64,000 nucleotides of DNA from Corallochytrium limacisporum Hawaii (Eukaryota > Protista > Pluriformea), in NCBI GenBank assembly GCA_002811645.1, contig PDIP01000002.1, forward strand, positions 131,683-195,682, given 5' to 3'. The notes under the pieces are model-generated. The model did not search any database, had not been told where the DNA came from, and saw nothing but the letters and a program-made list of their open reading frames with translations. Positions 8,831-40,866 of the stretch are shown here, one piece after another. Made by a program: the position numbers and the translations under genes. Position 1 is the first letter of the stretch; each line of letters begins with the position of its first letter.

Positions 8831-9068
8831 ATCGGCGACGCTGTAGGAAAAAATATTCGCAACGGACCTTTGTTTGGGCATTTGACACTATCTTCTGTTT
8901 CCTCTGTTTATGTTGTCCGTCCTCTCTGGGAACAACAATATGCAGCGCTAAGAACCAATCATGTTGTTACAGGTATTTTCGGGCGGCAACATCTGCAATT
9001 AGGGTACTTCGGAAATACTTGCATTGATCGGAACTATAGAATCGATAACACAGAAGCATACATTCAAG

Positions 9069-9821
9069 ATGCGGAAAGCTACACAGGAAAAGTTGTTGTG
9101 CATGAATTGCAAGGCCACTACCACCCCAATGTGGCGTCGTGGACCTGACAATGAATTGCTTTGCAATGCTTGCGGTTTGTACTTTAAGACTCATGGTGAG
9201 CATCGTCCTCTTGGCCTTTGCAACATGCAGGTGCGCAAAGCCACGACTAAGGGCGTCCCTAAGGCGCGTAATGCCCGTCAACTAAAGCGCCGTGACAGTG
9301 AGGCTTCTACCGCCAGTGCAGGTTCACCACCTCCTGGTAATCGCCTGCTTCCAGGACCGTTTAACCTTCGTGGTGAGTCTATTCACGCTGGCGACGTTGT
9401 AGCAATTCGTGCGGCGGACATGAACGTGTACTATGCCGTCATTGACGGGTTTTACTTCCAGTACCGCGAACAGATCCTCGCCTCTATTCGTTGGCTCATG
9501 CCCATGTACCAACTGCCCCCCAACACACCTTTTGACATTCGCAATTTCTGCACATCTCCTAATGATCCAAAGACCGTGCTGAGCATCGAGTCCATTCTAG
9601 AAATTGTCTCCCAGTACAGTGCCCCCGCACCTCAACACACATACCCCCAGCAGCAGGCACCTCCTGCTCCTCAGGGTCATGGCCCGGCCCCCTACTATCA
9701 TGATGCTCCTAAGGAACCTTATGTGTATGAGCAGCGTCAGCCCCACCGTCAGGGACATGGTGATGTCTCTGAGGCCGCTTCAGTTTTGTGCGGACTCCAT
9801 AGTGGGAATTATGGACAGTAA
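9069..9821 (+). CDS. GATAD1: GATA zinc finger plus BAH-like domain protein (GATAD1-like)
   Basis: CMNC-x17-CNAC GATA finger (TTPMWRRGP...[16 protein letters not shown]), followed by [12 protein letters not shown]...YYAVIDGF...IRWLMP...FD, matching the GATAD1 C-terminal domain. First ATG is 9069 (the ORF track starts at an upstream TTG). Confidence 0.85.
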
Positions 9822-24435: not shown

Positions 24436-27400
24436 TCATCCGCCCAGATGATCAGTGGCCCCGAAGTCACGACGGATGACCTCGCTAACTCCCAAACTGT
24501 TTCGCTGCACTATGTGCATAGTTCTGCACAGACGTCGCATATTTAACATCTTGACAAACTCAACGTCATGAGTGATCACCAAGAGCTGGAAAGAGTGCTG
24601 AATCTTCCGTTCCTCGACAATGTCGCAGACCGCTTGGGCTAGAGCCTCAATATTCTCTTTGTCCAGATTCGTGGTTGGTTCGTCCAGCGCCATAATGCCA
24701 CAGTCTAGTCCGAATTCCTCTGCCAGTGCGAGGCGGATTATCAGAGATGCCAGCACCTTCTGACCCGCACTGCATCGGTTCCTCATTTCCAATTCGGCCC
24801 CATTCTTGACCATGACAACTGAATAATCGTACGTACGCTTCGCATCTGCACCTGCTGTGGCTGTTTGATGTGCGCGGATGCGAATATTATCTACATCATT
24901 GCCACGGTACGTCTTGGACCAATAATGTGCGATTGTGCGATTGATATTGTCCATCTTAAGCCTGTGATACTTCTGAATGGCTAGTTCGACAGCTCGGAAT
25001 GTCGTATCCAGATCACTGGCGATGACCTTCTGGATCTCAAGGTCTACCTTGATTTGAATCATTTCATCTTCTGCTGCGGCATAGTACTGTTGATACTCGT
25101 CCTTCATGCGCTTTATCTCCTTCTTCCGGTTGTCCATGGTAGTAGCCAACGAGACCTCGTCGGTAATAGCTCTCTCCCGTCTCCGAACCTGTTGATCCAT
25201 TTCGATCTCAATATGTTCATTCGCCGAGCCAGGACCCCAGGTATGAGCAAACAGTTTCTTCAAATCTTCACACTCGGACTGCAGAGTATCTAAACCGGCC
25301 AGCAACTCCTTAAGCTGGAGATTGTCTCTCAACTTCTGCTTCTGTGCATCCCTGGTGTCCTTGTCTTTTAACAATGCTTGTACATTGCTCCGCAGAGTCT
25401 GTACCGTGTTCTCAGCAGTCTCCCTTTGTGTCACTATGTGCTTCAGAGAGGCCTTAATGTTCTGAATTCTGTCGAGGAGTTCTGCCTTGACTGTAGGTGA
25501 GGTGGCCGCATGCAAAGACTTGAAGGAGGTAACAGCCTCTGTCATTTGCAGTAGTTCATCAGAGAGGCCGTGTAGTTCTTCTGCATGTCTCTCGCGAAGC
25601 AATTGAGCTTGACGCACCGTTTCACGTTCCTTTGTTTGCAAGAGGCTTAATTCATTGCGGAGGCCTACAATGAGATCACCCGTAGCTTTAAATTCCTCAT
25701 TCTTTAGCGTGAGTGTTTCCTTGATTTGATCTACTTTGGCAACACCAGTCTCAAGTTCTCTACACTTCCCATTTGCCTGCTCGTGTTTCCTCCTGATTGT
25801 ATCCATTCGGTGGTGGTGATCATCAATATCGCTTTGCACACGGTCGAATTCCGTGCCCAGCTTCTCATGTCGGCTCCGAAGATCCTCCAGGGCTTGGTAC
25901 ATTTCCTTTTCGGTTACGCCATCACCAAGAAACGATCGTGCTAAGGAGCTGAGGACCGATTGCTCTGCGGCTAGTCTGTCTTGGATGGACTCAATTTGTG
26001 TCTCCCTGTGCACAAGATCACGAATATCATGACGCAAAGTCTCATTGGCTTCCATTTGCTGTTGAAGCGTGTCCAGTTTCAGCTCTGACTCGAGCAGATG
26101 CTGCTCAATTCGAACCAGCTGATGTTTCACAGATTCCATCTCCTTTTGTGCGGAAGTGTGATGCGCATTGTTCATCAGCTCCATCTTCACCCCTACGAGG
26201 TTCGTCAATACGTCAATTCTAGTCACTGTCGGCTCAATCTGCGCTTCTTGTTGTCGTGCACGCTCTGGTAGTTTTTCTAGTTTCTCCTCCAACTTCCTTA
26301 AGAGATCGATAGCATGCTGGCGCTTTTCAAAGGATCTCTGGCACAATGGACAACACTCATCTTCTTCCAGAGACTTAATCTGCTTCTTCACCTGAGCCTC
26401 TAGTACGGACACTGCCTTCGAATTCACTTTCAGGCTCTGGAGGTGATGCTCTTCGTCCACCAAGCATTTTTGGACTTCCTCTAATGACTTGGTATCGTCG
26501 TCTTTGCGACGTAGAGCTTCCATCTTTGCTTCAAGGTCTTCAAAGGCTGCCCTACGTTGCATGTCTTCCCTTCTCAAGTGTTCAAGCTCTGCCTTGGAGG
26601 CTGCGATCTCTTCCCGCAGATCGCTTTCCTCTTCACGCTTAGAGAATGTGTCCTCATCGGCCCGCTTTAGATTAAGCTTCGTGGAACTTACTTCTACATA
26701 CCAGTCTGTGCCGGATTCCCTGGCCTTCTGGTGAATTGCGGTCAGTTCTGCCTGGAGATGCTTCTCCTCAATTTCCAATTGCATCTCCAGTTTCTCTACA
26801 GATGCCTTCTGCCTGAAGTACTCAGACGCACTTCGAAGGTCTCCTTCGGCCTGCTTAATCTCCACGGTGAGCTCTGTCCTCTCCTTGCGAATTTCATCGC
26901 GTCGGGCATGCCAACGATTAACTTGCTCGGATTCCTCCATAGCAGTCATTTGTGCCTTGATTTCCTTTACTAGTCGCAGTTGGCGAAGGTATTCTCTATT
27001 GTCCTCTTCAATCTGCGCTACCTGAGCTCTCAATGCATCTTGCTCTCGTTTCAATATCTTCTGTTTCTGCTCTTGCTGCTGAATTCGTGTTTGGCGATCC
27101 TTCAGGGCCACTTGCGCCTCGTATGCCTGCCGTTCAGCAGCAGTCTCCTCTTCATGAAACGCTGCACGCTTTTCGCGTTGTGCTTCCTCCTTGTTGTTTT
27201 TGAGCATGCTTAGGGCGTCTTCAAATTCGAATGCCCCATCTTGGCTTTCTAAGCCTCCTGTGGATATAGCGATAGGAAATTGTTGTGCGAGCTTCTTCAT
27301 CATTGCGACCTTCTCGCTGCAGCGAGCTTCAAAATCAACATCCTGCCTTTCCACCCCACCGAGGTCCCTGCCAAGTTCCTTTTCTGTTTGGTTCAGCTGC

Positions 27401-28425
27401 TCCAGTTCCGCTTCATTTGTTAACAGTTCAGTTCTAGCTTGCTCGAGGTTCCTGTCATCTGTCGCGTCAGCGAAACAGTCCGCTGCAATCAACTGCGTCA
27501 GGTCGTCTACGGTAGCTTCCGCCATTAAATTGGACCCCAGTCGTGATTGCAAGTGCTCCACAGTCTCATTGCGGTGACCTAGCGTTGACTGCTTGTCTTC
27601 TAGTTCCCGTTCAGCCTGACGCTTCTCTTTTAGTTTCTCTCGCAATTCAGAGAGCCTCATCGATATGCTTGTTACTTCTTCTGTAAGCTTTGCATGCTCG
27701 GCATATTTTGTGTTCAGTTCTGCCTCGGCAGCTTTGTATGCACGCTTCTTCGTCTTTGCGATAGACACCTCCTTCATCTTGTTCTCAACATCTCTTTCGT
27801 TCAGTATCCTTTTCTGAGCGATGTCCTTCTTCTGTTTCTTTAGTTCGTTCAGCACTTGCTCATACCGATCGGAACTGAATATCTCATCAAACTTCTTCTT
27901 CACTGAAGAATTGTCTTTCAAAGGCCAGTTGCTGTCCTCTTGATGACAGAAAATAACATGCTCAAGCACAGACTTCGGCACCGCAAATAGTCCCACCACC
28001 TCATTGTCAAGGGTAGCAACTCTCGTGGCCCTTTGAACTCTCTGCCCAGTGATTTTGTCAATAAAGGTCAACTCACACTGTAAAGTTTTCACTGACGGAT
28101 TATTTGCACGGTCCAATTTTGACTCTAACCTTCGAGTACACTGGTAGTAATTACCATCCTTCGAATAGAAGGAAAGCTCCACTTTTGCCTTCGTATCCGA
28201 ACTCTTGCTTACTCTTGGATCATGAACAAAGAACGTTTTGTTGGATGGAGACTCGCCCGTAGTGACATACTTCAAGGCTTCAATGATAGTTGTTTTTCCA
28301 GCTCCATTCTCGCCACAGATGATAGTTAACGGACCACTGGTAAAGTCTATAGCCTGCTCGCGCTGAGATCTCGATCCTGCAAAGGAACGAAGTCCAGAAA
28401 ACTTTAGGGTGTCGAGATACGCCAT
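24436..28425 (-). CDS. RAD50: DNA repair protein Rad50
   Basis: GLRSF, Walker A GENGAGKTTIIEAL, VIFCHQEDSNWP, long coiled coil with zinc hook CPLC, signature CSAGQK, LDEPTTNLD, VITHD. Confidence 0.97.
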   Translation of the reverse strand: MAYLDTLKFSGLRSFAGSRSQREQAIDFTSGPLTIICGENGAGKTTIIEALKYVTTGESPSNKTFFVHDPRVSKSSDTKAKVELSFYSKDGNYYQCTRRLESKLDRANNPSVKTLQCELTFIDKITGQRVQRATRVATLDNEVVGLFAVPKSVLEHVIFCHQEDSNWPLKDNSSVKKKFDEIFSSDRYEQVLNELKKQKKDIAQKRILNERDVENKMKEVSIAKTKKRAYKAAEAELNTKYAEHAKLTEEVTSISMRLSELREKLKEKRQAERELEDKQSTLGHRNETVEHLQSRLGSNLMAEATVDDLTQLIAADCFADATDDRNLEQARTELLTNEAELEQLNQTEKELGRDLGGVERQDVDFEARCSEKVAMMKKLAQQFPIAISTGGLESQDGAFEFEDALSMLKNNKEEAQREKRAAFHEEETAAERQAYEAQVALKDRQTRIQQQEQKQKILKREQDALRAQVAQIEEDNREYLRQLRLVKEIKAQMTAMEESEQVNRWHARRDEIRKERTELTVEIKQAEGDLRSASEYFRQKASVEKLEMQLEIEEKHLQAELTAIHQKARESGTDWYVEVSSTKLNLKRADEDTFSKREEESDLREEIAASKAELEHLRREDMQRRAAFEDLEAKMEALRRKDDDTKSLEEVQKCLVDEEHHLQSLKVNSKAVSVLEAQVKKQIKSLEEDECCPLCQRSFEKRQHAIDLLRKLEEKLEKLPERARQQEAQIEPTVTRIDVLTNLVGVKMELMNNAHHTSAQKEMESVKHQLVRIEQHLLESELKLDTLQQQMEANETLRHDIRDLVHRETQIESIQDRLAAEQSVLSSLARSFLGDGVTEKEMYQALEDLRSRHEKLGTEFDRVQSDIDDHHHRMDTIRRKHEQANGKCRELETGVAKVDQIKETLTLKNEEFKATGDLIVGLRNELSLLQTKERETVRQAQLLRERHAEELHGLSDELLQMTEAVTSFKSLHAATSPTVKAELLDRIQNIKASLKHIVTQRETAENTVQTLRSNVQALLKDKDTRDAQKQKLRDNLQLKELLAGLDTLQSECEDLKKLFAHTWGPGSANEHIEIEMDQQVRRRERAITDEVSLATTMDNRKKEIKRMKDEYQQYYAAAEDEMIQIKVDLEIQKVIASDLDTTFRAVELAIQKYHRLKMDNINRTIAHYWSKTYRGNDVDNIRIRAHQTATAGADAKRTYDYSVVMVKNGAELEMRNRCSAGQKVLASLIIRLALAEEFGLDCGIMALDEPTTNLDKENIEALAQAVCDIVEERKIQHSFQLLVITHDVEFVKMLNMRRLCRTMHIVQRNSLGVSEVIRRDFGATDHLGG

Positions 28426-29108: not shown

Positions 29109-29137
29109 GTTATTGCGGAATGAGATAGTTGTTCACC

Positions 29138-31189
29138 ATGGATGGTCTTCCGCCAGGAGATTTGGCGGCACTCCTTGCGGGCTGGCCGAAAGCGCTTGAA
29201 GAGGTTCTACAGGCCCAGTCTGGGGACGACAAAAAGATCAATATTGACTTTGTCAGAAGTTTCTTGAGCTCGAAATCATATGAGACAACACTAAAGTGCT
29301 TCAAGATTGCCCAGGAAGCAAGTAATAAGAAGCTTGAGAACGCAAAGGCACCGACGCGTGAGTCTTTAAAATGTTTGGAACGTACATTGGCAGCTCTAAA
29401 TGAGGATCCTGAAGCATCCTGCGGACTCGATCCGGATGAGCTGCAGCAATTACTCACTCTCCTCAGCTCTCCTCACCTTCACAGTATATTGCGAATTTGC
29501 GATCGAGTTGTGACGGGACAATACGCCAATTTCGACGCGGATACTTCGATACCAGCAAGTGGAGAGGGTGTCGTTGAAGGTGTTGCAAGTCCTCCCGTGG
29601 CCGCGGTGCCCACCGACGACGTGCTCCCAACTTCCACGGAATCCACGACAGCGCAAGAAGATAAAGTCGACGAGGTCAAGATTTCATTCATCGAAAAGAA
29701 GGATAATGCCGTTATCTTGAAGTCTAGAGAGGGTGCCTGGTCACGGTGCGGAGTTAATGTCGTTCGGTGCACGTCAGGGACATTCCGAATTGCAATGCTG
29801 GACGTTGATGCCGTTCATCCCGTCATAGCTGAACACCTTCGTATTGCTTACGAACTCGCAGAGATCAATGACAACCCAACCAAAGGAAGGGAGCCCGACT
29901 ATCTTGCTAGCATTTGTAGATCGCAACAAACAAATGTTCTCAAGTTTGTACCCCCCAAGGCGGAGTTTGTCGGATACGATGAAGTCCCTGGTGGCTCAAC
30001 CATCCTACGCTCCATGATCCAGTACGTACCGGAAGATGATGAATACGTTGGACACGCAAGTCTAGCGCTACGGTTAAGCAAAGGCACATTGTTTTACGTT
30101 ACAACTTGGGCTGCTAAATCTGTATTTTGGACTGGACGATTAGTTAACCCGGCGACCGGGGAGCCGACCGGCGTAACAGGACTGATTCCAAGTACTTCTC
30201 ACGCAGAGGAAATGTTCTCTGGGAGGGTCAGTGCCACACACAGTGATGAGCTTGCAGCACACTCACCTAGAACTAAGAGGAAGAAGTCTCGCTTCCTTGG
30301 CATTGTCCCGCGAAGCAGGAAGTCAAAGAGCGACTCCTTGCTGAAAGCGGAGGATGCTTTGCATGGAAAATCGAATGATGAGGTATTGCTGGACTCGGAG
30401 CACGCGTATGAGCAGGTGGTTTGGAACGATCCTGTTGGAAAAGAAACCCGTCCGGTTGTGTTCTGCCTAGTCGGTCCCAAAAATGTGGGCCGTAAAGAGA
30501 TCCGGGCCAATCTAATTAAAGACTACCCGACGGTGTTTTCAACACCGGTGCACGTCACCTTGCCGGCGCTCGGGGGAGTAGACACTGCAACCGTTAATGG
30601 CAAGGGTGCAGGCTCGAACCAAAAGAAGGGAACTGCTGCTTTCCGCAGTACTTTTCGAGACAAGGGAAAGAAGTCGATGAACACGTCCGAGCCGTCCGCA
30701 GCATTTGACCTCGATGGTTATATTGAAGTCTTCCCGGAAGCCCAGCCACCGTATGGCATTACAGTGGACAGTCTAATTCGTGCCACCGAGAGCGGAGTCA
30801 AGGCGTGTCTGTACAACTGCGACATTACCACTGCTATCAAACTGCGGAAGCGTACAGATATTGACTGCGCTATCGTGTTTGTTACCACTCCCACCATAGA
30901 GGTACTCAAGCGCCTGCGCCCCGGGGTGCCTACTGATATCCTCTGCAAGCTGCCGAACGAATGCGCAGAGATGCGGGCAACCTTCGAGCAGTACTTTGAC
31001 TTTAGCATCACCAATGCGGTTCTGGAAGATAGTTTGACCAGCTTCATCAATCTAGTGACAAAAATGAGCGAGTGCGGTCGGTTCATCCCCATGCCGCACA
31101 CCCATCCCAAACGTACGTACAAGAACGGTAGCTTCGTCTCTCCTGATGCAGCCTCCAGTCGCAACCACCATGACGGCGATGTCCCGTGA
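29138..31189 (+). CDS. MPP/p55-subfamily MAGUK (L27-PDZ-SH3-HOOK-GuK), divergent
   Basis: L27 (LQQLLTLLSSPHLHSILRICDRV); PDZ (LRIAYELAEINDNPTKG...LKFVP); MPP-type SH3 (QYVPEDD...LRLSKG...W...GLIPS); basic HOOK; YEQV; GuK (LVGPKNVGRKEI...YGIT...IVFV...YFD...N). Confidence 0.85.
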   Translation: MDGLPPGDLAALLAGWPKALEEVLQAQSGDDKKINIDFVRSFLSSKSYETTLKCFKIAQEASNKKLENAKAPTRESLKCLERTLAALNEDPEASCGLDPDELQQLLTLLSSPHLHSILRICDRVVTGQYANFDADTSIPASGEGVVEGVASPPVAAVPTDDVLPTSTESTTAQEDKVDEVKISFIEKKDNAVILKSREGAWSRCGVNVVRCTSGTFRIAMLDVDAVHPVIAEHLRIAYELAEINDNPTKGREPDYLASICRSQQTNVLKFVPPKAEFVGYDEVPGGSTILRSMIQYVPEDDEYVGHASLALRLSKGTLFYVTTWAAKSVFWTGRLVNPATGEPTGVTGLIPSTSHAEEMFSGRVSATHSDELAAHSPRTKRKKSRFLGIVPRSRKSKSDSLLKAEDALHGKSNDEVLLDSEHAYEQVVWNDPVGKETRPVVFCLVGPKNVGRKEIRANLIKDYPTVFSTPVHVTLPALGGVDTATVNGKGAGSNQKKGTAAFRSTFRDKGKKSMNTSEPSAAFDLDGYIEVFPEAQPPYGITVDSLIRATESGVKACLYNCDITTAIKLRKRTDIDCAIVFVTTPTIEVLKRLRPGVPTDILCKLPNECAEMRATFEQYFDFSITNAVLEDSLTSFINLVTKMSECGRFIPMPHTHPKRTYKNGSFVSPDAASSRNHHDGDVP

Positions 31190-38900: not shown

Positions 38901-39849
38901 CTTCACACCCCGTCACCATCATAATCCGTGCACACATGTCTCTCAATTGGATCGCCGTATATCAGTATAGTGTGTGTGCTGCTACACCTCAACTCCGTTG
39001 ATGTACTACTATGCAGAACCATCGGTTCCGGACACTGTGTACACTGTCAGTAGCAATACACGCACAACCGGACCATCGGTACCCAGTGTAAACAGTATTA
39101 CAGGTGAAGAAAGGGATAGTTGGTTGGTTGAACCGCCGTTTCGAGTTGAAAACCGATTTCCACTTGCCCCTTTGGGTGGATGCGGCGATGAACCCTGTGT
39201 GGAGGATATCTGGGACAATACGTCAATAACAACGCACACCGCTTCTTGATACTATTCAGCAGCTTTTTGGTCAAGTGGGTTTTCTTGACAGTCTAGTTCC
39301 CCCCCTCCCTCCCCTCGTCCCTGCTTGGCTGCGTCTCTCATTCACTTTTTCCTTTAGGTCTTTTTCCTCCCACCTCACCCAATTGATAATATCAAGGAAA
39401 CATAAATATCAATACTATTTGCTGGGAAACAGAGTACACACCCGAATCCAAAGACTCTTCTGTCTTCTGACGGGTTCTGCAGTTCGAGGAGGAATAGTCG
39501 GACACAGAACGGGGGGAAAGGCAGAAAAAGGGGGGAAAGACAGCCACCATGGGGGAGGCCTTCTCCTCAGATTTCACTATAGAATTTGTTCCTATGATGA
39601 AAAGCCTAAGAAAGGGAGTTAGGGGGGCTAACCCTCAAGCGACGCGCAGAAGTGTAGAAAGGGGGGGGGAGGAGGGAGGGGTGGGGTGGGGGAGCACAGA
39701 GGGACGCGGAGCGAATGACTTGAGTCGGCTATTGGTAAATGTTTAGAATCGAGATGTAATGTATTCTTTAAATGCCATGTAGATGCTATGTTACGATGAT
39801 GTTCATGGATGTGTGATGTCGTTGTCGTTTTGTATGTACAGCCGGGTCT

Positions 39850-40866
39850 CTAATTGCCGGGCACAGTCTGATCTTCGTCCATGCGAGAAGACTTGGTCTG
39901 GCCGCGAGTAGAAGCCGGATAAGAGTCGTTGTTGATGGGCATACGCTTGTTGAAACCACTGGGAGTCTCTTCAATATCACGGAGCCACTCACTCTGCATG
40001 ACCTCGCGAGCAGTAGGGCGTTTCATGGGGTCCTTGGACAGCAGACGAGAGATCAGACGCTGCACAGAGGGAGACACCCAGCGAGACTGGGGGAACTCAA
40101 CCTGGTCGCGGATGATCGCATCGTATAGACGATCCTCAGAGGCAGCGGTGAACGGGTACACTCCGTAGAGCAGAGTGTACAGAATGACTCCGAAAGACCA
40201 CATGTCAGCGGCGAAGGGGCAGAACCAGAGCATGTTCATGGCTCCTGCACTGCAGGGAACCAGAACCTCTGGACTGACATATGCTGGTGAGCAGCGCTTG
40301 GAGCCAATCCAGACGTTCTTGTTGGTTCCGTGGTCCGTTGCCCACGTGAGCTGACCAAACTTCACATGATCCTTCTCGTTGAGAACAAGAATGTTCAGGG
40401 TCAGGTCATTGATGGCTACACCATTGCTGTGGAAGCGCTCAACAGACTTCAGGATCTGCCATGCAATGCGGCGGACTTCTGTTTCGGAGCTGGTGCGGTT
40501 CATAAGAATGTAACGAGCCAGGTCACACTTGATAGGCTCCTGAATGAGGAAGAAATCTCCATCGTCCTCCATGACTTCGTGTGTAGTAGGGAAATCATCC
40601 TTGAATTTGCGATCTGACATAAGAGGGCCCTCTACTGACGAGAACCGATTCCACATTTCTTTAGGCACTTGCCGGCAAGCGTACATATTTCCGAAGTTAT
40701 CGACGGCTGTGTATGTGTCGCGGCAGCACTGCTTGCTGTCCACGTAGTATTTTCCCTTGAGGGAGGTAAAGACCTCGCACTCAGAACTTGTCTGTTCTTG
40801 TAAGTTCATTGCTTCTGTAGTCCGTACAGTGCTTCTGTATTGAGTACCTTGGTTATCTCTTTCCAT
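39850..40866 (-). CDS. TRIB: Tribbles-family pseudokinase with C-terminal COP1-binding motif
   Basis: GKYYV; no Gly-rich loop; ACR for VCK; GVAINDLTL (TRIB: GLVLRDLKL); QLT for SLE/DFG; KRCSPAYVSPEVL; AADMWSFGVILYTLLYGVYPF; RPTA.EV..SEWL; C-terminal DEDQTVP. Confidence 0.85.
   Translation of the reverse strand: MERDNQGTQYRSTVRTTEAMNLQEQTSSECEVFTSLKGKYYVDSKQCCRDTYTAVDNFGNMYACRQVPKEMWNRFSSVEGPLMSDRKFKDDFPTTHEVMEDDGDFFLIQEPIKCDLARYILMNRTSSETEVRRIAWQILKSVERFHSNGVAINDLTLNILVLNEKDHVKFGQLTWATDHGTNKNVWIGSKRCSPAYVSPEVLVPCSAGAMNMLWFCPFAADMWSFGVILYTLLYGVYPFTAASEDRLYDAIIRDQVEFPQSRWVSPSVQRLISRLLSKDPMKRPTAREVMQSEWLRDIEETPSGFNKRMPINNDSYPASTRGQTKSSRMDEDQTVPGN

What the first reader, a model, noticed from the sequence alone, without database searches (positions are those of the whole stretch)
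39850..40866. Tribbles pseudokinase with intact COP1-recruiting tail in an apparently unicellular genome
Seen: all Tribbles hallmarks (no Gly loop, PAYVSPE, AADxWSxGV, DFG replaced), a counterpart of the ILxHPW-type motif (VMQSEWL), and C-terminal DEDQTVP (39859-39879). It is even less likely to be catalytic than animal TRIBs: beta3 Lys to Arg, DLKL to DLTL. Some residues are STK40-like (RxSPAY, DMW, LYG). Known: TRIB1-3 use DQxVP to bind the COP1 WD40 domain and degrade C/EBP, and the family is usually described as animal-specific. Inference: a pre-metazoan Tribbles-COP1 degradation module, perhaps near the TRIB/STK40 split.
Basis: partly seen in the sequence, partly recalled or inferred. Interest (0 to 1): 0.8.

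Follow-up and report, generated by a model that had tools for sequence, protein, structure and literature searches.

The report
Tribbles pseudokinase in a single-celled animal relative
A single-celled relative of animals (Corallochytrium) encodes a dead-kinase adaptor of the Tribbles family, complete with the short tail that in animals hooks it to the COP1 ubiquitin ligase, so this protein-destruction module, described as animal-only, predates animals and seems to predate its classic target C/EBP.

Summary
Window 39850-40866 (-) is an intronless 338-aa ORF with a kinase fold and degenerate catalytic motifs, ending in DEDQTVPGN.

It is a Tribbles-family pseudokinase:
- In a careful tree it sits in a 100/100 clade with named animal TRIB1/TRIB2, three ichthyosporean-type proteins (two named: Abeoforma, Amoebidium) and a clade holding a choanoflagellate (Mylnosiga) protein.
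- The clade survives removal of the catalytic-motif columns.
- The [DE]QxVP tail, which was left out of the tree, occurs only in this clade.

The genome fits Corallochytrium limacisporum (24.1 Mb). It encodes a full COP1 with a conserved VP pocket, and DET1. A predicted COP1-WD40/tail complex scores 0.92 against 0.00 for the controls, with V335 and P336 in the known pocket. A similar complex has been solved, so this shows likeness, not binding.

The family scores far closer to TRIB1/2 than to STK40. No C/EBP-type bZIP was found, so the substrate is unknown.

The published statement that Tribbles is absent outside animals, choanoflagellates included, looks outdated. This scan had noted only this same stretch before. 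Verdict: a new member of a known kind, of moderate to high evolutionary interest.

The parts
39850..40866 (-). Whole ORF of the Tribbles-like pseudokinase (338 aa including M1; stop at 39850-39852)
   Evidence: ORF list. Pfam Pkinase E 5e-30. Single copy in the genome.
39976..40755 (-). Pseudokinase domain, about residues 38-297
   Evidence: AF2 model has pLDDT mostly above 90 over residues 50-300. Alignment with TRIBs. These are the tree columns.
40672..40674 (-). R65, at the position of the beta3 (VAIK) lysine
   Evidence: Alignment with TRIB2 sequences: CR against CK.
40393..40407 (-). Catalytic-loop remnant D154-L-T-L-N158 (TRIB: DLKLR)
   Evidence: Alignment. D154 and L157 are invariant or nearly so in the family.
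40345..40353 (-). Q172-L-T174 in place of DFG (aligned with the SLE of animal TRIBs)
   Evidence: Alignment.
39853..39975 (-). Disordered C-terminal tail, residues 298-338
   Evidence: AF2 pLDDT is below 50 over 307-329.
39859..39879 (-). DEDQTVP, the COP1-type VP motif (Q333 anchor, V335-P336 core)
   Evidence: V335 and P336 are at least 90% conserved in 39 family members. In the predicted complex, residues 332-338 contact the COP1 pocket, score 0.92 against 0.00 for controls.
40807..40809 (-). Alternative start codon M20 (the start of the public 319-aa model P0001)
   Evidence: P0001 matches query residues 20-338.
39756..40829 (-). Span covered by two transcript-like contigs of 2015 runs of the same organism: collinear, no joints, about 94 nt beyond the stop
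   Evidence: read-laying table 8: X3 covers 39824-40829 and X4 covers 39756-40730, with 0 differences. That these runs are RNA is the tool's guess.

Best explanation
The ORF encodes the Corallochytrium ortholog of the animal Tribbles pseudokinases. It is a catalytically dead CAMK-type kinase fold that most likely serves as a binding platform. A disordered C-terminal tail ends in DQTVP, and this motif most likely docks into the VP-peptide pocket on the WD40 propeller of the organism's own COP1 ubiquitin ligase, which may work with DET1 (also encoded). Whatever the pseudokinase domain holds would then be brought to COP1 for ubiquitination.

Shown here: family membership; the motif and its conservation; COP1 and DET1 in the genome with pocket residues conserved; probable transcription.

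Inferred: physical binding to COP1, the adaptor role, and degradation of a substrate. The substrate is unknown and is probably not C/EBP, which this genome appears to lack. The family, tail included, dates at least to the last common ancestor of Holozoa.
For: Similarity:
- The best PDB sequence hit of the protein alone is TRIB1 (E 3.9e-20).
- In an exhaustive HMMER search of 1.84 billion representatives, the best per-domain hits are Abeoforma whisleri P0112 (108 bits, ends ESEQVVP), two unnamed proteins (P0133, P0135), then insect 'tribbles homolog 2' and others.
- Amoebidium parasiticum P0208 ends TEQEVPNM.
- The ESM Atlas nearest clusters are tribbles homolog 3 and 2.

Phylogeny:
- IQ-TREE LG+C20+F+G4 on 76 rows places the query in a 33-row clade of animal TRIBs, a Mylnosiga-containing clade and ichthyosporeans, with 100/100 support.
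- The clade holds at SH-aLRT 99 after removing the Gly-loop, beta3, catalytic-loop and DFG columns.
- A profile of ten non-animal members against PDB gives TRIB1 250.7 and TRIB2 242.4 bits, with Snf1 next at 201.8.
- The VP tail, not used in the tree, is confined to this clade: 26 of 26 rows.

COP1 and DET1:
- COP1 is G000:C177, 638 aa, E 7.7e-149 to full-length COP1.
- By my count along that alignment, K384, Y403, W429 and F557 match Arabidopsis K422, Y441, W467 and F595, the VP-pocket residues of PMC6745501.
- DET1 scores 217 bits.

Predicted complex and expression:
- ipSAE is 0.92 against a best control of 0.00. That mark was reached by 51 of 78 solved complexes and 2 of 108 mismatched pairs. 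The runs agree in at least 44% of contacts, and the partner's pLDDT is about 40.
- The lowest-error contacts are V335 with F557 and P336 with W429.
- Transcript-like contigs cover the gene.
Against: - Alone, the protein scores barely better against TRIB1 (75.6 bits) than against CaMKII (74.3). It is the longest branch in the tree (1.65), so its position inside the clade is unresolved: 87/79 beside the choanoflagellate clade, nearest the ichthyosporeans.
- It departs from animal TRIB signatures: beta3 Lys is Arg, DLKL is DLTL, SLE is QLT, HPW is SEW, and VP is followed by Gly-Asn instead of Asp/Glu.
- The complex score may come from the model's memory of the solved COP1-TRIB1 peptide complexes. 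Peptides and disordered chains are outside the test's calibration.
- No C/EBP-type substrate was found.
- RNA status of the supporting contigs is a guess by the tool.
- The structure search does not separate TRIBs from AMPK or CaMKII.
Confidence: 0.72

Rival explanations
1. The protein binds COP1 through its VP tail but brings no substrate. It would be a competitive regulator or pseudosubstrate that occupies the VP pocket, as plant UVR8 and cryptochromes do, or it would itself be a COP1 substrate whose level is controlled by degradation.
For: - The VP pocket is shared by substrates and by inhibitors in plants, where photoreceptors displace substrates (PMC6745501).
- No C/EBP, the canonical cargo, is detectable here.
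- The predicted interface uses only tail residues 332-338.
Against: - The pseudokinase domain is conserved across Holozoa. The C-lobe motifs SPAYVxPE, AADxWSxGV and YPF are kept. This argues that the domain itself binds something.
- Animal TRIBs with the same architecture are adaptors (PMC5382568).
Confidence: 0.18
2. It is a divergent, degenerating CAMK-family kinase paralog whose DQTVP ending and Tribbles-like look arose by chance or by long-branch attraction among pseudokinases. It would have no link to COP1.
For: - On its own it scores almost equally against TRIB1 and CaMKII.
- It has a long branch.
- Several TRIB signature residues differ.
Against: - Clade support is 100/100, and 99 after the degenerate catalytic columns are removed.
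- Other rows lacking an intact catalytic loop in the 164-row set do not join the clade. Apart from four rows inside it, 31 of 35 lie elsewhere.
- The tail motif is outside the tree columns yet is confined to the clade.
- The closest relative in 1.84 billion proteins is an ichthyosporean protein with the same tail.
- The gene is single-copy, intact and apparently transcribed.
Confidence: 0.05
3. It is an STK40 (SgK495)-type pseudokinase, or a form that predates the TRIB/STK40 split, rather than a Tribbles proper.
For: From my own knowledge, not tested here, STK40 also binds COP1.
Against: - The profile of unicellular members scores STK40 (5l2q) at 178.0 bits, 72 bits below TRIB1 and below Snf1, MARK and MELK.
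- The protein alone scores TRIB1 at E 3.9e-20 against STK40 at 1.9e-17.
- The named members of its clade are all TRIB1 or TRIB2.
Confidence: 0.05

Closest known systems
Animal Tribbles pseudokinases (TRIB1-3; Drosophila Trbl; invertebrate 'TRIB2')
   Same: - CAMK-type pseudokinase without a Gly-rich loop and with DFG lost.
- A D-L-x-L catalytic-loop remnant.
- The SPAYVSPE and AADxWSxGV C-lobe motifs.
- A disordered C-tail carrying DQxVP.
- The same clade in the tree.
- A COP1 partner present in the genome.
   Different: - Beta3 Lys is Arg, DLKL is DLTL, SLE is QLT, and HPW is SEW.
- The VP motif sits two residues from the C-terminus and is followed by Gly-Asn, not Asp/Glu.
- The host is unicellular and lacks a detectable C/EBP.
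- Identity to animal TRIBs is only about 25-31%.
Ichthyosporean and choanoflagellate Tribbles-like proteins (Abeoforma whisleri P0112, Amoebidium parasiticum P0208, Mylnosiga fluctuans P0314 and unnamed environmental relatives)
   Same: - The same family and the same tail motif.
- Abeoforma is the closest relative found: 108 bits, 31-40% identity depending on the alignment.
- The ichthyosporean-type tails also end at or within two residues of the VP...EQVVP...DHVVP...EQEVPNM.
   Different: - These keep the catalytic-loop Lys (DLKLN, D[IM][KR]LGK).
- The Mylnosiga clade reads FADLxGA at the DFG site.
- None of them is described as Tribbles in the sources I could read. I saw names only as 'serine/threonine protein kinase' or none.
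STK40 (SgK495) pseudokinase
   Same: A CAMK-like pseudokinase. From my own knowledge it is reported to bind COP1.
   Different: Much lower profile score than the TRIBs: 178 against 250 bits. It was not placed in the tree because no sequence was available.
Plant VP-motif partners of COP1 (HY5, UVR8, CRY1/2, CO)
   Same: A short Val-Pro peptide binds the same WD40 pocket (W467, F595, K422, Y441), and those residues are conserved in the Corallochytrium COP1.
   Different: These are unrelated proteins with no pseudokinase domain. They act as substrates or light-regulated competitors, not as adaptors.

Membership tests
Tribbles (TRIB) pseudokinases | Protein-kinase fold of the CAMK group | tested here: met
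   Pfam Pkinase E 5e-30. AF2 model pLDDT 82.5, pTM 0.79. Top folds are AMPK, TRIB2, CaMKII and TRIB1.
Tribbles (TRIB) pseudokinases | No glycine-rich loop and loss of the metal-binding DFG Asp (pseudokinase) | tested here: met
   No GxGxxG upstream of beta3. QLT stands at the DFG position.
Tribbles (TRIB) pseudokinases | Signature catalytic loop (L)RDLKLRKF and SLE in place of DFG | tested here: inconclusive
   The query reads INDLTLNI and QLT. D154, L155, L157 and the central Leu are kept, but the Lys and the SLE letters are not. Ichthyosporeans read RDLKLN.
Tribbles (TRIB) pseudokinases | Retained beta3 lysine | tested here: not met
   R65 aligns with the TRIB Lys.
Tribbles (TRIB) pseudokinases | C-terminal COP1-binding motif [D/E]QxVP | tested here: met
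   DEDQTVP at residues 330-336. V and P are at least 90% conserved in 39 members. The motif is confined to the clade.
Tribbles (TRIB) pseudokinases | HPW[F/L] (MEK-binding) motif at the end of the domain | tested here: not met
   VMQSEWL keeps only the W and L. Ichthyosporeans read HDWL, HPWM and HPWV. The motif is not specific to TRIBs among CAMKs.
Tribbles (TRIB) pseudokinases | Groups with named TRIBs to the exclusion of other CAMK kinases | tested here: met
   100/100 clade in IQ-TREE C20. 99 after dropping the catalytic columns. 95 in a 164-row FastTree.
Tribbles (TRIB) pseudokinases | Physical binding of the tail to the COP1 WD40 domain | not testable with these tools
   Prediction only: ipSAE 0.92, best control 0.00. 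The mark was reached by 51 of 78 solved complexes and 2 of 108 mismatched pairs. Runs agree in at least 44% of contacts; the partner's pLDDT is about 40. The pass may come from memory of solved COP1-TRIB1 complexes. COP1 is present with a conserved pocket.
Tribbles (TRIB) pseudokinases | C/EBP-type bZIP substrate in the same organism | tested here: not met
   Ten bZIP_2 matches, none with the RNNxAVxKSR basic region. The one genome-wide pattern match is off-frame inside another gene. A published statement agrees: CEBP only in Filozoa.
STK40 (SgK495) | Closer in sequence to STK40 than to the TRIBs | tested here: not met
   The family profile scores STK40 at 178.0 bits against TRIB1 at 250.7. 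The single protein scores 66.7 against 75.6 bits. A tree with STK40 was not possible.
Active CAMK kinases (CaMKII, AMPK/Snf1, CDPK) | Intact Gly loop, VAIK Lys, HRDLKPEN and DFG | tested here: not met
   All four are degenerate.

The most novel reading that the evidence does not exclude
The Tribbles-COP1 adaptor module arose in the stem of Holozoa, before C/EBP existed, with a different original cargo. C/EBP would then have been captured later, in the line leading to animals. If so, Corallochytrium, for which stable transfection has been reported, gives direct access to the ancestral substrate and role of Tribbles.
Probability: 0.45. Interest if true: 0.7.

Novelty: new member of a known kind. 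Interest (0 to 1): 0.6.

Why it matters
Tribbles pseudokinases are studied as leukaemia oncogenes and metabolic regulators. They are a textbook case of a dead enzyme turned into a ubiquitin-ligase adaptor.

The field's main evolutionary review states that they are almost confined to animals and absent from fungi, plants and choanoflagellates (PMC5382568). The present data place a tail-bearing Tribbles in Corallochytrium, in two named ichthyosporeans and in a choanoflagellate. That moves its origin back to the holozoan ancestor, and it shows that the COP1-docking tail is as old as the family.

This early-branching holozoan has COP1 and DET1 but no recognisable C/EBP. The finding therefore separates the origin of the adaptor from that of its best-known substrate, and it makes the ancestral function testable in a unicellular organism. 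It also adds one more 'animal' signalling device to the unicellular toolkit, which is by now a familiar pattern and limits the surprise.

Tried and rejected
1. The word-index protein searches with the protein and with query plus Abeoforma returned mostly CDPK/CCaMK kinases. This is an effect of shared 5-residue words, not of kinship, so I did not use those rankings.
2. The whole-protein ranking of the exhaustive search is headed by proteins with several kinase domains, whose scores add up. I re-ranked by best single domain.
3. Foldseek against PDB does not separate TRIBs from AMPK or CaMKII. It is useless for membership.
4. A second RING+WD40 ORF (G000:C223, L004) is not COP1. Its best PDB matches are generic WD40 proteins.
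5. The only genome-wide match to a back-translated C/EBP basic-region pattern lies off-frame inside a 654-aa ORF that I did not identify, and no leucine zipper follows it. I take it as chance.
6. The animal-contamination idea is rejected. The gene lies on a contig of at least 195 kb of a 24.1-Mb assembly (window at C175:131683-195682), has no intron, and is found with zero differences in contigs of the same coded organism from three separate studies.
7. STK40 could not be put in the tree. No tool gave me an STK40 sequence by reference, and I did not type one.

Full report
OBSERVATION

The window holds an uninterrupted ORF at 39850-40866 on the minus strand (338 aa, ATG start). Pfam finds a protein kinase domain (Pkinase E 5e-30, residues 95-295).
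- No GxGxxG loop.
- R65 where the beta3 lysine should be (YACRQV).
- A catalytic loop INDLTLNI. It keeps the Asp (D154), but the Lys is replaced by Thr and the catalytic Asn position is Ile.
- QLT (172-174) in place of DFG, aligned with the SLE of animal Tribbles.
- SPAYVSPE (193-200), AADMWSFGV (219-227) and VMQSEWL (289-295).
- The ending ...SSRMDEDQTVPGN, with DEDQTVP at window 39859-39879.

The protein is therefore a pseudokinase by four independent criteria. The start may be M1 or M20. The public model P0001 begins at M20.

HOST

The genome handle G000 has 24,109,830 bases in 286 contigs. Earlier notes of this scan name it Corallochytrium limacisporum. The published assembly of that species is 24.1 Mb and intron-poor (PMC5560861). 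The stretch is held, with 0 to 1 differences, by contigs of runs of one coded organism from 2015 and 2017. The window's neighbours (an L27 plus guanylate-kinase MAGUK-like ORF, GATA, RAD50, CK2-beta, HMGCL) fit a holozoan. I take the host to be this unicellular holozoan and not an animal.

Two contigs of about 1 kb from the 2015 runs cover 39756-40829 and nothing beside it. They have no joints and reach about 94 nt past the stop. This looks like a transcript of an intronless gene, but the tool only guesses that these runs are RNA.

WHAT IT IS

Alone, the protein's best PDB sequence match is TRIB1 (E 3.9e-20, 75.6 bits), only just ahead of CaMKII (74.3 bits). STK40 is at 1.9e-17.

An exhaustive HMMER search of 1.84 billion representative proteins found no close relative; nothing is above 41% identity. 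Ranked by best single domain, the leading hits are:
- P0112, from the ichthyosporean Abeoforma whisleri (108 bits), which ends ...ESEQVVP.
- P0133, with DQVVP in its tail.
- P0135, which ends ...DHVVP.
- Insect proteins named 'tribbles homolog 2' (P0147/P0249, P0153).
- Further down, P0208 from the ichthyosporean Amoebidium parasiticum, ending ...TEQEVPNM.

A group of unnamed environmental proteins carries SPAYVAPE and DDQVVPD tails. It includes P0314 from the choanoflagellate Mylnosiga fluctuans. A language-model feature search gives tribbles homolog 3 and 2 as the nearest clusters.

PHYLOGENY

A 164-row FastTree puts the query in a clade (support 95) that holds all 26 rows with a VP tail.

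A careful IQ-TREE run (LG+C20+F+G4 PMSF, 76 rows, 265 columns, tail excluded) gives a 33-row clade with 100/100 support. It holds:
- 16 animal TRIBs, including named TRIB1 and TRIB2.
- 13 rows of the Mylnosiga clade.
- 3 ichthyosporean-type rows.
- The query.

The other 43 CAMK-type rows lie outside, among them Chk2, CDPK, CCaMK, CIPK and SNRK.

Pseudokinases could cluster artificially through shared losses. I therefore removed the Gly-loop region and the beta3, catalytic-loop and DFG columns and rebuilt the tree. The same 33 rows remain one clade (SH-aLRT 99), and the query then lies nearest the ichthyosporeans.

The query's branch is long (1.65), and its place within the clade is not resolved.

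A profile of ten non-animal members against PDB scores TRIB1 at 250.7 and TRIB2 at 242.4 bits. There is then a gap of more than 40 bits to Snf1 (201.8), MARK and MELK, and STK40 scores only 178.0. The family is Tribbles proper, not STK40-like. I could not add STK40 to the tree.

THE TAIL AND COP1

The [DE]QxVP tail was not part of the tree, yet it occurs only in this clade: 26 of 164 rows, and none of the 103 rows with an intact catalytic loop. V335 and P336 are conserved in at least 90% of 39 aligned members.

The genome encodes the partner machinery:
- A 638-aa COP1 with RING, coiled coil and WD40 (G000:C177; E 7.7e-149 to full-length COP1 7vgg, about 1e-119 to COP1 WD40 chains).
- DET1 (217 bits).

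In the printed alignment, and by my count, COP1 K384, Y403, W429 and F557 correspond to Arabidopsis K422, Y441, W467 and F595. PMC6745501 shows that these residues hold the VP core and the anchor residue, which is TRIB1 Gln356 in the TRIB1 complex. Q333 of DQTVP stands at the anchor position.

The predicted complex of COP1 300-638 with tail 296-338 gave these results:
- ipSAE 0.92 (three runs: 0.91-0.92), best of three controls 0.00.
- The mark was reached by 51 of 78 solved complexes and 2 of 108 mismatched pairs.
- The runs agree in at least 44% of contacts, and the partner's pLDDT is about 40.
- The interface uses only tail residues 332-338.
- The lowest expected errors are for V335 with F557 and P336 with W429, and K384 is also in contact.

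Similar complexes have been solved, and peptides lie outside the calibration. This shows likeness to the known binding mode, not binding.

WHAT IS MISSING

The ten bZIP_2 matches in the genome are of CREB, ATF, XBP1, OASIS, Jun/Fos-like and CYS3-like kinds by their basic regions. That classification is my reading. None has the C/EBP signature RNNxAVxKSR.

A genome-wide search with the back-translated signature gave one match. It is off-frame inside a 654-aa ORF that I did not identify, and no zipper follows it.

Nagahata et al. state that CEBP homologs are found only in Filozoa and are lacking in an ichthyosporean (PMC10653094). The classic cargo therefore appears to be absent, and the substrate here is unknown.

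The gene is single-copy.

MECHANISM

Most likely (about 0.7), this is a Tribbles-type adaptor. The dead kinase domain binds a client and the DQTVP tail recruits COP1, possibly together with DET1 (also encoded), for ubiquitination.

Family membership, the motif, and the presence and pocket conservation of COP1 are shown. Binding, the adaptor role and degradation are inferred.

The main rival (about 0.18) is that the protein only regulates or is regulated by COP1, as plant VP-motif photoreceptors do. A chance resemblance and an STK40 identity are each unlikely (about 0.05).

NOVELTY

Eyers et al. 2017 state that TRIB-related sequences are almost entirely confined to animals and absent from fungal, plant and choanoflagellate kinomes (PMC5382568). 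In the searchable library, the only paper on Tribbles that also mentions choanoflagellates is this review; the other paper holding both words is a WWP1 review. No listed paper links Tribbles with holozoan protists.

The present result places tail-bearing Tribbles in Corallochytrium, Ichthyosporea and a choanoflagellate. It is a new member of a known kind. It revises the age of the family and uncouples its origin from that of C/EBP.

The library covers only open-licence papers, so an earlier report elsewhere cannot be excluded.

Noticed in passing
P0314, P0133, P0162, P0172, P0226, P0177, P0188, P0159, P0213, P0310 and relatives (proteins, not in the window): A well-supported clade (100/97) of Tribbles-like pseudokinases with D[IM][KR]LGKI, FADLxGA, SPAYVAPE and DDQVVPD tails. 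Its one named member is from the choanoflagellate Mylnosiga fluctuans (EukProt EP00047). The rest are unnamed environmental or Logan sequences. This contradicts the published statement that choanoflagellates lack Tribbles.
   Followed up: partly
P0112 (Abeoforma), P0135 (unnamed), P0208 (Amoebidium); window 39853-39879: In the ichthyosporean-type proteins and in Corallochytrium, the VP motif sits at the very C-terminus, with 0 to 2 residues after Pro. In animal TRIBs an acidic residue and more tail follow.
   Followed up: no
window 29129-31189 (+): A 686-aa ORF with an L27 domain and a guanylate-kinase domain, which is a MAGUK-like scaffold architecture, next to RAD50 (24436-28425, -).
   Followed up: no
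window 9024-9821 (+): An ORF with a GATA zinc finger (Pfam E 5.9e-17). Its listed start codon is TTG, so the true start is probably elsewhere.
   Followed up: no
L004:1024-2739 (-) = G000:C223, about 164823-166538: A second RING plus WD40 protein (571 aa) that is not COP1. Its best PDB matches are generic WD40 repeats (FBXW7, designed propellers). It could be a TRAF7-like ligase.
   Followed up: partly
L010 and L011 (G000:C242:28219-28368; G000:C8:16929-17072): Two bZIPs whose basic regions read RN(C/T)(L/A)ASARFR, which I recall as typical of the fungal CYS3/MetR type. They occur in a holozoan genome beside CREB-, ATF-, XBP1- and OASIS-like bZIPs.
   Followed up: no
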